Position numbers and translations under genes: made by a program. A DNA stretch of 6,024 nucleotides, taken from assembly GCF_006345805.1 (NCBI RefSeq), contig NW_021829448.1, positions 1 to 6,024 of the forward strand, read 5' to 3'. Shown here piece by piece: positions 928 to 6,024 of this stretch; position 1 is the stretch's first letter, and each line of letters starts with the position of its first letter. The DNA comes from Octopus sinensis. Its lineage: Eukaryota. A model generated the notes under the pieces. That model saw only the letters and a list, made by a program, of their open reading frames with translations, had not been told where the DNA came from and made no database searches.

Positions 928-1032
928 ATCATCATCATCATCGTCATCATCTTTCATATTATTATTATTATCGTCATTATCATCATCATTATTATTATTA
1001 TCGTCATTAATCAATCATTAATCATCATTTTA

Positions 1033-1079
<47 letters not shown>

Positions 1080-1104
1080 TTAGTATTAATCATTATTATT
1101 ATTA

Positions 1105-1138
<34 letters not shown>

Positions 1139-1433
1139 CATTATTATTATTATTATTATATTATCATTATCATCATTATTAATTATTATTATATTATTAT
1201 TAATTATTATTATTATTATTATTATTGTTATTATTATTATTATTATATTATTATTATTATTATTATTATATTATTGTTATTATTATATTATATTATTATT
1301 ATTATTATTATTATTACTACTACTATTATTATTATTTCTATTATTTTTATTATTATTATTATTAATTATTATTATTATTATTATTAGATTATTATTATTA
1401 TTTCATCATCACATCATTATTATTATTATTATT
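928..1433. repeat. Long imperfect (ATC)n to (ATT)n microsatellite, about 500 bp
   Basis: ATC units grade into ATT units with frequent single-base phase shifts. Confidence 0.95.
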
Positions 1434-2134: not shown

Positions 2135-2416
2135 TATAAATATATATGAATATATGTGAATGAATATACGCGACTCACCCACATATATATGTGGCTACAT
2201 ACATACATATATTTATATATATATATTCATATATATTCATATATATACACACACACAAACATATACGTATATATATATATATATATTATATTATATATAT
2301 TATATATATATGTATATGTATATATATGTAGCCACATATTATATGTGGGTGAGTACGTGTATATACATTCATATATTTATATATATATATATATAAAATA
2401 GACACAAGCATATACG

Positions 2417-2455
<39 letters not shown>

Positions 2456-2703
2456 GTATTATGTATATAGCCACATATATATGTGAGCGAGTATGCGTTT
2501 ATACATTCATATATATTCATATATACACACACATATATGTATATATATTTATATATATATACTGAGAAAGAGAGAGACAGAGACAGAGACAGAGAGGCGT
2601 AGATAGATATGTAGGTATAATTGTATCCAATACACGCGCACATACATATATGTATGTAATTATGTATGTATATTTTCTTTGAGGTTTAACTTTTTATGTA
2701 TGT
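1800..2703. repeat. (TA)n/(TG)n/(TATG)n low-complexity block containing a composite ~140-160 bp repeat in two forward and two inverted copies
   Basis: Core ATGAATGTATATACGCGTACTCACCCAC(AC)ATATATATGTGGCTAC at 1995-2040 (+), 2156-2198 (+), 2328-2372 (-) and 2468-2510 (-). A GA/GACA tract lies at about 2564-2596. Confidence 0.85.
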
Positions 2704-3046: not shown

Positions 3047-3480
3047 TGGATCTTTTCGGTTTGAACGGCAGTTTTTTAAAATAATTTCCACGTAACTAAA
3101 CACTTTTAAACTTCGTATACTGGTAGAATGTGTTTATAAAACATCTTTTTCTCTTGGCTTTATTGAGAAAATTCTATAGTTTGTAAGATATTTGTTGTTT
3201 TGTTTTCTACAATTTCTGCAATTTCAACCATCACTGATGTCTATTGAGATGAAAAACATTCTGTGCCGTATGAATATGTCCCTCGTTTAAGAAACCGATT
3301 GGGTTTATTTACATTTGTGAAGAAAAAAGATACCCTTCCCCCCACCCCTAACCCTAACACTAACTAACCCTAACCCTAAAACAGATTGAAATGCAATAGA
3401 TCGATACTAGGGTCATAAATATGGGTGACAATTTCATATGACACCGCTAGAAAAACTGCCGTTCAAACCGAAAAGATTCA
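3047..3480. mobile_element. MITE / non-autonomous DNA transposon, 434 bp, superfamily unassigned
   Basis: Perfect 27-bp TIR ATCTTTTCGGTTTGAACGGCAGTTTTT (3050-3076) and its reverse complement (3451-3477), extendable to 30 bp with 1 mismatch. Direct repeat ATTTTG at 3041-3046 and 3481-3486 is a candidate TSD. No transposase ORF inside. Confidence 0.85.
3346..3379 (-). repeat. Telomere-type (TTAGGG)n-like repeat inside the MITE
   Basis: The + strand reads CCCTAA CCCTAA CACTAA CTAA CCCTAA CCCTAA: four perfect units, one variant and one partial. Confidence 0.85.
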
Positions 3481-3629: not shown

Positions 3630-3721
3630 CATACTGGTTTCATGTTTTGGCACAGAGCCAGCAGTTACGAGGGAAGGGGCAAGTCGATTACATCAACCCG
3701 ATGCTCAACTGGTACTTATTT
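3630..3721 (-). mobile_element. 3' half of a tRNA-derived SINE (tail type 2), 5'-truncated, inverted relative to its neighbours
   Basis: Reverse complement AAATAAGTACCAGTTGAGCATCGGGTTGATGTAATCGACTT...CTGCTGGCTCTGTGCCAAAACATGAAAC aligns to 4031-4116 at about 68/86 by manual alignment. Confidence 0.85.
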
Positions 3722-3952
3722 GGTGGCGAGCTGGCTGAATCGTTAGCACGCCGGGAAAAATACTTCGTGGTATTTTGTCTGTCGCTACGTTCTGAGTTCA
3801 AATTCCGCCGAGGTCGACGTTGCCTTTCATCCTTTCGGGGTCGATTAAATAAGTACCAGTTACACACTTGGGTCGATGTAATCGACTTTGTCCCTTTGTC
3901 AGTCCTTGTTTGTTCCCTCTATGTTTAGCTCCTTGTGGGCAATAACGAAATA
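3722..3952 (+). mobile_element. Apparently full-length tRNA-derived SINE (tail type 1, LINE-like tail)
   Basis: tRNA-like head with A-box-like TGGCTGAATCGT and B-box-like GTTCAAATTC. A 120-nt body is shared with 3953-4072 (98/120, ungapped). The 3' tail ends ...CTTGTGGGCAATAACGAAATAG. Matches my recollection of an abundant Octopus SINE. Confidence 0.85.
3732..3806 (+). promoter_or_regulatory. Internal RNA polymerase III type-2 promoter (A box 3732-3743, B box 3796-3805) of the SINE head
   Basis: TGGCTGAATCGT resembles the TRGCNNARYGG consensus and GTTCAAATTC resembles GTTCRANNCC. Spacing is typical of tRNA-derived SINEs. Activity is unknown. Confidence 0.65.
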
Positions 3953-4123
3953 GGTATTTTGTCTTTCGTTACAGTCTGATTTCAAATCCCGCTGAGGTCG
4001 ACTTTGCATTTTATCATTTCGGGGTTAATAAAATAAGTGCCAGTTGAGTTCTGGGGTTGATGTAATCGACTTAATCCCTTCTTTGAAATTGCTGGCCTTG
4101 TGCCAAAATTTGAAACTGTATTA
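3953..4123 (+). mobile_element. 5'-truncated, older SINE of the same body family (tail type 2)
   Basis: Starts at GGTATTTTGTCT (equivalent to 3769), lacks the A box and has a mutated B box (TTTCAAATCC). Shows CpG decay relative to the 3722 copy. Tail ...TTGCTGGCCTTGTGCCAAAATTTGAAAC. Confidence 0.85.
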
Positions 4124-4618
4124 GATTACGAAGATAGAACGAAGTACCTGTTGAATATTGAGCAAGATGTAGTGTTCCTTTTTATTGATTGATTAAGCAA
4201 AGATTACTAAACAAGATTTCCAAGATTTCCAACAACCAGATTTCACTCACGTGGTTTCGATCGATCCGGCCTAAGAGGCAGTTGAGCGTAAAGGAATGGG
4301 AAGCGAACTCGAAACTGCATAGATGAGATGTGATCATTATAACTACACAACCACATGCATACTCTGTTGAAATCTTCACTTATAATCAAACATCTTAAAA
4401 AGATATCCATGAAAGTATTCTATCAAAATTTCAGGTGTATTTCTGTTCTAGATGCCAGGTAAATAATGACGAACTATTTTACTAAATTTTTAATTGTTTT
4501 AAAAGATATTGAAATTAAGGTAGTGTATTTCATGAGAAATAATGTAGACGATTCGATCGGTTTAATCTCCGATTGTCATCAGACCAGATTATTTAAGATT
4601 AGCAACGCTATTTCTTAT

Positions 4619-4683
4619 CCACGCTGCTTCGAAAGCACATGGTTGCAAAGCGAACTTCTCAGCAACACAACTACGCTTGCACC
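4619..4683 (-). mobile_element. Degenerate 5' head of a second tRNA-derived SINE family, B-box region apparently deleted
   Basis: Minus strand GGTGCAAGCGTAGTTGTGTTGCTGAGAAGTTCGCTTTGCAACCATGTGCTTTCG resembles a recalled octopus SINE head (GGCGCAGGCGTGGCTGTGTGGT..AGAAG.TTGCTT..CAACCA.GTGGTT). There is no second copy in the window to confirm it. Confidence 0.4.
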
Positions 4684-4686
4684 TTT

Positions 4687-5177
4687 TATGTATGTACGTA
4701 CATACAAGGGATGTATGTATGTATGTATGTATGTATGTATGTATGTATGTATGTATGTATGTATGTATGTATGTATGCATGTATGATATGTATGTACGTA
4801 CGTACGCAGACGTACTGTATGTATGTATGTATGTATGTATGTATGCATGCATGCATGCATGTATGTATGCATGTCTGTATGTATGTATGTATGTATGTAT
4901 GTACGTACGTACGTACGTGTTTGTATGTATGTATGTTTGTATGTATGCATGTATGTATGTATGCATGTATGTATGTATGTATGTATGCATGCATGTATGT
5001 ATGTGTGTATGTATGTATGTATGCATGTATGTATGTATGCGTATGTATGTATGTTTCTATGTATGCATATATGCATGTATGTGTGTGCGTGTATATATAT
5101 ATACGTGTGTGTGTGTGTGCCATATATATAAGTTTGTATGCATGCGTGTATATATGTATACATTCATGTATGTATGT
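4687..5177. repeat. Long (TATG)n tetranucleotide array with TACG/TGCA/TGTG variants
   Basis: About 490 bp of TATG-based units. It generates the MYVC and HTYI repeat ORFs. Confidence 0.95.
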
Positions 5178-5525
5178 CAGTGTGTATGGGGACTGGAGCA
5201 AGTGCGTGTAACCATGATAACAAACAGGTGACTAAAGACAGCTTTGTCTATTGAAGTGTACGCATCAGTTAATTTGAAAGGAAAAAACGGATGACGGTTA
5301 AAAGCTTTCAACGGCAGCCATATTATCATTGAACGTATCGCATGCATCGGGTGGCCCATCTTTAAAGTTACGCGAGAAACATGAAATTTGGGAATGTAGG
5401 AAACGGTTCAAAGTAATTCTCATTTCTTACATTCTTTGTTTCAGAATTTATTTATTTATTTCATTTACTTTGTTATTAGTTTATAATAATTGTCAAGGAT
5501 TGAGTTAATGTGGTGAATATTACAA

Positions 5526-6024
5526 AGAGATAGATAAGTTTCTTTATTGGCCACACAGGGCTGCACACAGATGGGACAAGTTACAAGGTAGAGCTTTTCT
5601 TTTGGGGGATGAAAAAAAACAAAAAAACAAAAGAATAAAAAGGGGTGGCGTAGGTTTTCGATCAAGAGGGATCGTAAAAGGAAAGAAAAGGACAAAAAAA
5701 AATAAAAATTAAAATAAAAATAAAAAGAATAAAAGGAAAAAAAGAAAAGGAAAAAAAAGGAAACAAAAGAAAAGAGAATGAAAAAAGAAGAAAAAAGGGG
5801 ATAAAAAGGGGAAGAGGTAAAAAAACGATCAATAGGGATCGTGTATCACAGTGTTATGATATATGGTGTAAGGGGAAAGCAAGTAAGGTTTATCGTGGAA
5901 GGAAGAAAAGCCTACGAAAAAGACCACGGTATCCTTGGTCAATATTGTTATATGTTACCACATTTGTTTGCAAGTGGGTAACCCTCTGTTTTCAATTTCT
6001 GGGTTCATAGGATTATGCTCAAGG
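5526..6024 (-). mobile_element. Probable 3' end (3' UTR, possibly the last ORF2 codons) of a non-LTR retrotransposon (LINE), truncated by the window end
   Basis: On the minus strand: a possible terminal frame ..LSIIL-stop (TGA at 6007-6005), a ~460-nt UTR with a long U-rich tract, AATAAA (5548-5543) and a short TATC-type tail (5526-5537). The 3' 50 nt are homologous to the SINE tail at 3904-3950. An L1/Tx1-like affinity is recollection only; no RT sequence is visible. Confidence 0.6.
5543..5548 (-). terminator. Polyadenylation signal AATAAA at the 3' end of the LINE-like element
   Basis: TTTATT on the + strand, 5 nt from the tail. The equivalent position in the SINE copy reads AATAAC. Confidence 0.55.

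What the first reader, a model, noticed from the sequence alone, without database searches (positions are those of the whole stretch)
3904..5588. SINE and its putative partner LINE in one window: shared 3' tail with a conserved mini-hairpin
The SINE tail 3904-3950 (+) CCTTGT---TTGTTCCCTCTATGTTTAGCTCCTTGTGGGCAATAACGAAA aligns with the minus-strand terminus 5588-5539 CCTTGTAACTTGTCCCATCTGTGTGCAGCCCTGTGTGGCCAATAAAGAAA at 37/50 columns with one 3-nt gap, and both end at the same point. Each has a small hairpin just before AATAA: GCTC-CTTGT-GGGC (3928-3940) and GCC-CTGTGT-GGC (5561-5550). Shared tails recognised by the LINE reverse transcriptase are established for stringent pairs such as eel UnaSINE1/UnaL2. 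If this LINE is L1/Tx1-like, as I recall, that would be unusual because mammalian L1 relies on poly(A) rather than a specific tail. Together with the tail swap, it suggests a SINE that captured a new LINE's 3' end.
Basis: partly seen in the sequence, partly recalled or inferred. Interest (0 to 1): 0.75.

Follow-up and report, generated by a model that had tools for sequence, protein, structure and literature searches.

The report
Orphan octopus SINE-type tail, no LINE
The 50-base match is real, but it is a lone, decayed copy of the 3' end-piece that octopus short repeats (SINEs) carry; nothing in this window is the long autonomous element (LINE) it was taken for, so the finding is mostly ordinary.

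Summary
The window is octopus DNA. The alignment holds: 3904-3950(+) against 5588-5539(-) gives 37/50 columns with one 3-nt gap. Its local score is 22, against a shuffle mean of 6 and maximum of 12. The match rises to 41/50 against a consensus of eight SINE copies.

The LINE reading fails in this window. 5589-6024(-) has no ORF, no Pfam domain and no copy in about 140 kb of Octopus DNA. Much of it is low-complexity sequence. Homology is confined to about 55 nt, with no SINE body and no target-site duplication.

Octopod tRNA-CORE SINEs end in a shared 3' module: a 4-bp GC stem, a CTTGT loop, 6 nt, GAAA, then ..TAT. It occurs in three tail variants on one SINE body. Compensatory stem changes support the hairpin: 79/80 cells pair, with covariation 0.85 against 0.25 in shuffles. 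The one unpaired cell is in the 5549-5561 copy. A model built without window sequences does not detect that copy.

Best reading: an orphan, 5'-truncated, decayed retrocopy of the tail. Its source RNA, SINE or unknown LINE partner, is unresolved. The L1/Tx1 assignment has no basis.

The parts
3720..3953 (+). SINE unit 1: tRNA-like head (A/B-box-like), CORE-like middle, type-A tail
   Evidence: 88% identical over 226-231 nt to an O. vulgaris copy, L001 10150-10380. Its ORF hits Octopus hypothetical proteins. Copies with 14- and 17-bp target-site duplications exist in L003. ARAGORN and Rfam do not call a tRNA.
3904..3953 (+). Type-A 3' tail module. Stem 3928-3931/3937-3940, loop CTTGT 3932-3936, spacer AATAAC, GAAA, TAG-GTAT
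   Evidence: Model R2, built without window sequences, scores 3918-3958 at 42.4 bits, E 2.5e-6. Covariation across 20 tails.
3953..4125 (+). SINE unit 2: starts at SINE position ~52 (GTATTT..), no head, type-B tail. Stem 4093-4096/4102-4105, loop 4097-4101
   Evidence: 81% identical to 3769-3896 (D6). R2 scores it at 35.6 bits. The tail-B RNA folds better than shuffles, z = -2.5. The same A-to-B junction recurs in L003.
3637..3719 (-). 5'-truncated SINE copy in inverted orientation, type-B tail. Stem 3657-3660/3648-3651
   Evidence: Inverted repeat I1, 3637-3699 against 4054-4116, 79% complementary. Aligned. R2 gives 19.6 bits.
5533..5588 (-). Orphan, decayed type-A-like tail ('tail-L'): CCTTGTAACTTGTCCCATCTGTGTGCAGCCC[TGTGT]GGCCAATAAAGAAACTTATCT
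   Evidence: 37/50 to the window SINE tail. 41/50 to the tail-A consensus. Scores of 21-23 to Argonauta SINE tails. No SINE body upstream and no TSD of 6 nt or more. Stem has a C.C mismatch. Not found by R2.
5589..6024 (.). Flank claimed to be LINE: A/G-rich low-complexity tract (5589-5830) plus about 190 nt of unique sequence. Not part of any recognisable element
   Evidence: No relevant ORF. No Pfam family in six frames. No match in about 120 kb of Octopus DNA. Its 17-nt near-palindromes at 5660-5676 and 5826-5842 are absent from all loci.

Best explanation
WHAT IT IS. 5533-5588(-) is a solitary, mutated copy of the type-A 3' tail module that terminates octopod tRNA-CORE SINEs. The flank at 5589-6024 is ordinary non-repeat and low-complexity DNA, not a LINE.

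THE MODULE. It reads: T/G-rich lead-in, then a 4-bp GC stem, CTTGT loop, 6-nt spacer, GAAA, then ..TAT. By analogy with stringent SINE/LINE pairs, it is the element that a LINE reverse transcriptase binds to start target-primed reverse transcription (inferred).

HOW THE ORPHAN AROSE (inferred). An RNA carrying this tail was copied from its 3' end, and synthesis stopped after about 55 nt. That is extreme 5' truncation. Alternatively, the rest of the copy was lost later. The copy then decayed, acquiring a stem mismatch, loop changes and a 3-nt indel.

SOURCE RNA. On abundance a SINE is the likelier source, at roughly 2:1 over the unidentified LINE partner. The sequence cannot decide between them.

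THE COMPARISON SINE. 3720-4125 is one composite element: head, CORE and tail A run directly into a headless second unit with tail B. In this copy 'tail A' is internal.

SHOWN: the homology, the module, the covariation, and the absence of any LINE features here. INFERRED: the recognition role and the truncation mechanism.
For: - The window is Octopus DNA.
- Homology is significant but confined to about 50-55 nt.
- There is no SINE body upstream (local score 10 against a null of 9.7) and no TSD.
- There is no ORF and no Pfam domain.
- The flank is not repeated in about 120 kb of Octopus DNA.
- About 30 module instances were found in about 185 kb of octopod DNA plus the window. Every one except this sits on a SINE body.
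- 5'-truncated SINE copies are common in the same sample, for example L003 21437-21594.
- The hairpin is supported by compensatory changes between tail types. The orphan carries the only broken pair, and an independent model misses it. That fits a dead copy, not a master element.
- SINE copies with tail A have ordinary 14-17-bp TSDs, so the tail is used in retrotransposition.
Against: - The orphan is not simply a copy of the O. vulgaris tail-A consensus. It differs by a 3-nt indel and six substitutions.
- Its terminus, GAAACTTATCT, resembles Argonauta tails (GAAATYTATCT) more than Octopus tail A (GAAATAGGTAT). So its source may be an older SINE subfamily or the LINE lineage itself.
- No TSD was found, so insertion by retrotransposition is not demonstrated.
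- The sample is small: about 140 kb of Octopus and 36 kb of Argonauta DNA.
- The covariance model was trained on SINE tails, so it could miss divergent LINE tails.
Confidence: 0.6

Rival explanations
1. The 55-nt piece is a heavily 5'-truncated copy of the true LINE partner of the octopod SINEs. Only the tail was copied, and the flank is not LINE.
For: - LINE copies are typically 5'-truncated (established knowledge).
- The piece lies wholly inside the putatively LINE-derived part of the SINE tail.
- It differs from the SINE-A consensus by an indel and by its terminus. It is about as close to Argonauta tails (scores 21-23) as to single Octopus SINE-A copies (score 24).
- A-like tails on two different SINE heads in Argonauta imply that a LINE source exists.
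Against: - No LINE with this tail was found in about 185 kb of octopod DNA.
- All other module instances, about 30, are on SINEs.
- The stem is broken and the loop altered.
- The only LINE 3' ends I could test do not match. The RTE 3'UTR profile gives E = 9. One R4/Dong-like copy ends instead in a different hairpin plus (ACAT)n.
Confidence: 0.27
2. One reading: 5526-6024(-) is the 3' part of a LINE, L1/Tx1-like, whose RT ORF lies beyond the window end.
For: - Only the 50-nt tail similarity.
- L1-Tx1, CR1, RTE and Dong-R4 LINEs are all active in O. vulgaris according to PMC13282606.
Against: - No ORF and no Pfam hit in 5200-6024.
- 240 nt of low-complexity sequence lies directly upstream of the tail.
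- There is no second copy of any part of 4541-6024 in about 120 kb of Octopus DNA.
- Homology does not reach the start of the SINE's tail-specific region.
- Nothing in the sequence assigns a clade.
Confidence: 0.05
3. The similarity is chance or compositional, arising from T/G-rich sequence with repeated TTGT motifs.
For: Both sequences are T/G-rich. The tails as single RNAs fold no better than shuffles.
Against: - Score of 22-30 against shuffle maxima of 12-13.
- It is the best non-self hit in the window.
- The same segment also matches Argonauta SINE tails through to the terminus.
Confidence: 0.01

Closest known systems
Stringent SINE/LINE pairs with a shared 3' stem-loop tail, e.g. eel UnaSINE1/UnaL2 and the CORE-SINE partnerships with L2, CR1/L3 and RTE tabulated in PMC3747384
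   Same: - tRNA-type head, CORE-like middle and a specific non-poly(A) tail.
- The tail carries a short stem-loop with compensatory changes, followed by a short terminal repeat-like end (..TAT/ATT).
- The same tail sits on different SINE heads, in Argonauta.
- Tail exchange occurs within one SINE family.
   Different: - No LINE carrying the tail has been identified, here or in the accessible literature. Octopus is absent from the pair table of PMC3747384. RepeatMasker labels OK and OR2 only 'SINE/tRNA-Core'.
- The stem is only 4 bp.
- No functional test exists.
Octopus tRNA-derived CORE-SINEs OK / OR1 / OR2 (Ohshima and Okada 1994; cited in PMC4824008 and PMC4758252)
   Same: - Same host genus.
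- tRNA-Core architecture.
- Very high copy number: SINEs are 11.6% of the O. vulgaris genome (PMC13282606).
   Different: - I could not compare with the published consensus sequences, which are not held. Which named family 3720-4125 belongs to is therefore untested.
- The Repbase lengths inferred from RepeatMasker output, 465 nt for OK and 484 nt for OR2, are nearer the 406-nt composite than the 234-nt monomer.
Octopus RTE-clade LINE (RTE-2_OV type; PHD-finger-bearing RT) seen in L003, L004 and L005
   Same: An abundant LINE in the same genomes. Its 3'UTR ends in a short repeat, (AAATC)n. RTE is a common partner of CORE-SINEs elsewhere.
   Different: A profile of seven 3'UTRs does not detect tail A, tail B or the orphan: best E = 9.1. 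A single pairwise hint, p = 0.0025, did not hold up.

Membership tests
SINE/LINE pair sharing a 3' tail (stringent type) | Tail similarity between the two elements well above chance | tested here: met
   37/50 columns, score 22 against a shuffle maximum of 12. 41/50 against the consensus.
SINE/LINE pair sharing a 3' tail (stringent type) | One partner is an autonomous LINE: the tail is attached to a 3'UTR and an ORF with RT (and EN) | tested here: not met
   No ORF. No Pfam family in six frames of 5200-6024, while the control ORF gives RVT_1 at 3.6e-15. The flank is not repeated. No LINE with this tail in about 185 kb of octopod DNA.
SINE/LINE pair sharing a 3' tail (stringent type) | Conserved stem-loop in the tail, kept by compensatory changes | tested here: inconclusive
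   Met among SINE tails: 79/80 cells paired, 3 of 4 pairs changed on both sides, covariation 0.846 against 0.246. Not met in the putative LINE copy: C.C mismatch, altered loop, missed by model R2. The covariation rests on few independent events, type A against types B and C.
SINE/LINE pair sharing a 3' tail (stringent type) | The LINE mobilises the SINE in trans through the tail | not testable with these tools
   Needs a retrotransposition assay.
Octopod tRNA-CORE SINE | Pol III-type tRNA-derived head | tested here: inconclusive
   A/B-box-like motifs are visible (TGGCTGAATCG; GAGTTCAAATTCC). ARAGORN and Rfam call no tRNA. The class name SINE/tRNA-Core comes from RepeatMasker output in PMC9115989.
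Octopod tRNA-CORE SINE | Dispersed high-copy family with target-site duplications | tested here: met
   More than 25 copies in about 140 kb of Octopus DNA. TSDs GTATTGTTATAACC and GTACTTATTTAATCGAC. Related copies in Argonauta.
L1/Tx1-clade LINE | ORF2 with APE and RT; A-rich or poly(A) 3' end | tested here: not met
   No ORF and no domain. The tail ends ..GAAACTTATCT, not poly(A).
RTE-clade LINE 3'UTR (octopus family in L003/L004/L005) | Sequence homology to the family's 3'UTR | tested here: not met
   nhmmer with a seven-copy profile: best window hit E = 9.1.

The most novel reading that the evidence does not exclude
The orphan at 5533-5588(-) is a truncated copy of the still-unidentified LINE that mobilises the octopod CORE-SINEs. 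On this reading the stem / CTTGT-loop / N6 / GAAA / ..TAT module, conserved from Octopus to Argonauta and kept by compensatory changes, is that LINE's RT recognition element. The module would then be a direct probe for fishing out the LINE behind the SINE expansion that makes up about 12% of octopus genomes.
Probability: 0.27. Interest if true: 0.5.

Novelty: new member of a known kind. Interest (0 to 1): 0.3.

Why it matters
SINEs are about 11.6% and LINEs about 12.9% of the O. vulgaris genome (PMC13282606). Their expansion is often linked to cephalopod genome evolution.

In the sources I could read, no LINE partner is assigned to the octopus SINEs. This window does not supply that partner.

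The follow-up does define a compact, structurally constrained 3' module shared by three tail variants and by two SINE families in a second octopod family. That makes the partner question directly searchable in the available chromosome-scale assemblies.

The specific claim, SINE plus LINE in one window with L1/Tx1 affinity, should not be carried forward.

Tried and rejected
1. EXTENDING THE CONTIG. Exact-protein look-ups with window ORFs 4466-4786(+) and 5465-5695(-) found nothing on record.

2. FINDING OCTOPUS DNA IN THE DNA COLLECTIONS. I scanned with a 22-mer of the SINE B-box region. There were no hits in JGI metagenomes or IMG/VR. There was one hit in an archaeal genome; no tRNA is called there and I take it for chance.

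3. RTE AS THE SOURCE OF THE TAIL.
- One pairwise alignment of the orphan to an RTE 3'UTR looked suggestive: score 13, p = 0.0025.
- A profile of seven RTE 3'UTRs gave only E = 9.1. Rejected.

4. A DEGENERATE SINE BODY UPSTREAM OF THE ORPHAN. Local score 10 against a null of 9.7. Rejected.

5. FETCHING OCTOPUS LINE FAMILIES THROUGH PROTEIN SEARCH. The RTE ORF returned only one usable O. vulgaris protein. No CR1 or L1-Tx1 seed was available, so those clades' 3' ends were not examined. One R4/Dong-like copy (L003) ends in a different hairpin plus (ACAT)n. A second, in L004, is cut by an assembly gap.

6. LITERATURE.
- Sequence-string searches found nothing.
- Ohshima and Okada 1994, Ohshima et al. 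1996, Gilbert and Labuda 1999 and the octopus genome paper are not held.
- The SINEBase supplements are not held.

7. FOLDING ENERGY. It did not support the hairpin for type-A tails. The support comes from covariation only.
Full report
SOURCE AND ANATOMY

The window is microsatellite-rich eukaryotic DNA. An ORF read through the repeat at 3647-3925 hits only 'hypothetical' or SINE-exonised proteins of Octopus vulgaris and O. bimaculoides. The window is therefore octopus DNA.

Three pieces of one SINE family lie at 3637-4125:
- An inverted, 5'-truncated copy at 3637-3719(-).
- A unit with head, CORE-like middle and 'tail A' at 3720-3953(+).
- Directly abutting it, a headless unit that starts at SINE position ~52 and ends in a different 'tail B', at 3953-4125(+).

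ARAGORN and Rfam call no tRNA. The Rfam hits are sub-threshold microsatellite artefacts. RepeatMasker output in PMC9115989 labels the octopus SINEs OK and OR2 as 'SINE/tRNA-Core', with no LINE suffix.

THE OBSERVATION

The alignment of 3904-3950(+) with 5588-5539(-) is reproduced exactly: 37/50 columns with one 3-nt gap. The local score is 22, against 5.95 +/- 1.14 and a maximum of 12 in 5000 shuffles. It is the best non-self match of the tail in the window.

I fetched octopod DNA through annotated proteins:
- O. vulgaris: L001 (20 kb), L003 (51 kb) and L005 (21 kb).
- O. bimaculoides: L004 (49 kb).
- Argonauta hians: L007 (36 kb).

Eight tail-A copies, one of them the window's own, give the consensus CCTTGTTTGTCCCCTCTGTGTTTAGCCCCTTGTGGGCAATAAAGAAATAG. 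The minus-strand segment, 'tail-L', matches it at 41/50 columns with score 30 against a null of 6.4. The homology is real.

IS THERE A LINE AT 5526-6024(-)?

No evidence supports one, and several lines argue against it.
- The longest minus-strand ORF there is 76 aa, and none resembles RT or EN.
- All six frames of 5200-6024 give no Pfam family at E <= 1 beyond noise. A control octopus RTE ORF gives RVT_1 at 3.6e-15.
- 5589-5830 is A/G-rich low-complexity sequence.
- blastn of the whole window against about 120 kb of Octopus DNA finds many SINE matches but nothing beyond position 4540. In that sample plus L005, the 3' end of one RTE family recurs more than ten times.
- There is no SINE body upstream of tail-L either (score 10 against a null of 9.7), and no target-site duplication of 6 nt or more.
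- Homology starts at CCTTGT. That is 10-14 nt inside the tail-A-specific region, not at its junction with the SINE body.

The segment is therefore an isolated piece of about 55 nt.

THE TAIL MODULE

A scan for short hairpins around CTTGT-like loops, followed by a loop-anchored, gapless alignment of 20 tails, showed one shared architecture across three tail types on the same SINE body:
- Type A: GCCC[CTTGT]GGGC AATAAA GAAA TAG GTAT
- Type B: TGGC[CTTGT]GCCA AAATTT GAAA C.. GTAT
- Type C: GGGC[CTTGT]GCCT AGAGTA GAAA AG ATTATT..

In the 4-bp stem, 79 of 80 cells pair and 3 of 4 pairs show changes on both sides (GC to CG, UA to GC). The covariation score is 0.846. Shuffles give 0.246 +/- 0.06 (0/500 reach the observed value), and slid registers give at most 0.284.

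Two cautions apply. The covariation rests mainly on the split of type A against types B and C, so it reflects few independent events. And as single RNAs, type-A tails fold no better than shuffles (z = -1.3 and -0.2), whereas tail B does (z = -2.5).

Covariance-model searches found about 30 instances in about 185 kb plus the window. Every instance I inspected, apart from tail-L, is preceded by SINE body.

TAIL-L AGAINST THE MODULE

- Tail-L carries the only unpaired cell, a C.C at columns 12/22.
- Its loop is TGTGT, not CTTGT.
- It has a 3-nt insertion.
- Its terminus is GAAACTTATCT.
- A model built only from non-window sequences recovers the window's three SINE tails (42.4, 35.6 and 19.6 bits) but not tail-L at E <= 5.
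- Tail-L folds worse than shuffles (z = +0.8).

The 'conserved mini-hairpin' therefore holds for the SINE tails. It does not hold for the copy that was to be the LINE.

WHERE TAIL-L COMES FROM

Argonauta has A-like tails on two different SINE heads. This implies an external, presumably LINE, source for the tail.

Tail-L matches the Argonauta tails with scores of 21-23 (null about 8.5, maximum 16), including the terminus GAAATYTATCT. It matches single Octopus tail-A copies with score 24.

Tail-L is thus a variant of an old, slowly evolving tail lineage. It is not a plain copy of the young O. vulgaris tail A. This is compatible with an older SINE subfamily or with the LINE lineage.

On numbers, SINEs dominate: all other instances are on SINEs, and truncated SINE copies are common. 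I put SINE origin at about twice the probability of LINE origin, and I mark this as inference.

THE PARTNER LINE

It remains unidentified.
- An RTE-clade family (RVT_1 plus PHD finger) is frequent in the loci. A profile of seven of its 3'UTRs does not detect any of the tails: best E = 9.1. An initial pairwise hint, p = 0.0025, is therefore discarded.
- An R4/Dong-like element ends in a different hairpin plus (ACAT)n.
- No CR1 or L1-Tx1 copy was available to test. Both clades are reported active in O. vulgaris (PMC13282606).
- Octopus is absent from the SINE/LINE pair table of PMC3747384.

TAIL SWAP AND AGE

All three tails sit on one SINE body, so tail exchange is real.

Tail A occurs 7 times in 92 kb of O. 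vulgaris DNA and not at all in the 49-kb O. bimaculoides locus.

At one orthologous site, O. bimaculoides has a simple type-B monomer (L004 ~9661-9884). O. vulgaris has the same SINE with two extra ~184-bp tail-A units inserted between head and body (L003 ~9294-9884). Tail-A units therefore spread after the two species split.

Argonauta shows, however, that A-like tails are themselves old.

The recurring junction ..GAAATAG|GTATTTCG.. is seen in the window and at three L003 sites. It coincides with a GGTAT(T) microhomology between the SINE 3' end and its own position ~50. TSDs of monomer copies also begin with GTA.

VERDICT

The sequence observation is sound. The hairpin is real in SINE tails but degenerate in the second copy. 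The 'partner LINE in the window' is not there. The feature is an orphan SINE/LINE-type tail next to a composite SINE. That is an ordinary product of retrotransposition in a repeat-rich genome. A useful by-product is a defined 3' module that can be used to search for the missing LINE.

Noticed in passing
window 3720-4125; L003 9294-9884, 48149-48422; L004 9661-9884: Composite SINE. Tail A runs straight into a headless unit that starts at SINE position ~52 (junction ..GAAATAG|GTATTTCG..), and this recurs at several loci. At one orthologous site O. bimaculoides has a plain B-type monomer, while O. vulgaris has two extra ~184-bp tail-A units inside it. The junction lies at a GGTAT(T) microhomology between the SINE 3' end and its own interior. 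This suggests template switching or self-targeted insertion.
   Followed up: partly
window 3700-3722; L003 48400-48425: In both places a sense SINE head abuts an antisense SINE at the same spot (..ACTGGTACTTATT|). In L003 this is a true insertion with a 17-bp TSD, GTACTTATTTAATCGAC. TSDs of three tail-A copies all begin with GTA, which hints at a target preference.
   Followed up: partly
window 3047-3480: MITE-like element with 30-nt terminal inverted repeats, 97% complementary (TGGATCTTTTCGGTTTGAACGGCAGTTTTT). It holds a telomere-like (CCCTAA)n run at about 3340-3380. A related copy lies in O. bimaculoides at L004 18583-18758, 75% over 179 nt.
   Followed up: no
window 2173-2198(+), 2467-2492(-), similar near 2008 and 2340; L003 600-672(-): The motif ACTCACCCACATATATATGTGGCTAC recurs on both strands inside the TA/ACAT microsatellite block; 0 matches are expected by chance. 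An R4/Dong-like LINE in L003, with a CCHC/RHD endonuclease motif, ends in a comparable hairpin followed by (ACAT)n. These microsatellites may therefore be seeded or targeted by that LINE type.
   Followed up: partly
window 5660-5676 and 5826-5842: Two 17-nt near-palindromes, CGATCAAGAGGGATCGT and CGATCAATAGGGATCGT, bracket the A-rich low-complexity tract. There is no copy in any fetched locus.
   Followed up: partly
window 960-1430; L003 27050-27290, L004 31780-32050, L005 8140-8360: Type-C SINE tails end in (ATT)n and sit inside (ATT)n on both sides. The window has a ~470-bp (ATT)n tract. SINE 3' ends may seed or target this microsatellite.
   Followed up: no
L003 34217-35715: The last ~15 nt of an RTE ORF plus its 3'UTR are amplified into a tandem array of at least five copies, 90-97% identical, directly downstream of the element.
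   Followed up: no
L002 3318-3339 (Natrialba taiwanensis contig): A 22-nt exact match to the SINE B-box region in an archaeal genome. No tRNA gene is called there (ARAGORN). I take it for a chance hit.
   Followed up: yes
L006 (ENA metagenome scaffold, 2.7 kb): A metagenome scaffold encodes an RTE-type RT 70% identical to the octopus RTE. It is probably cephalopod or other molluscan DNA within a metagenome assembly.
   Followed up: no
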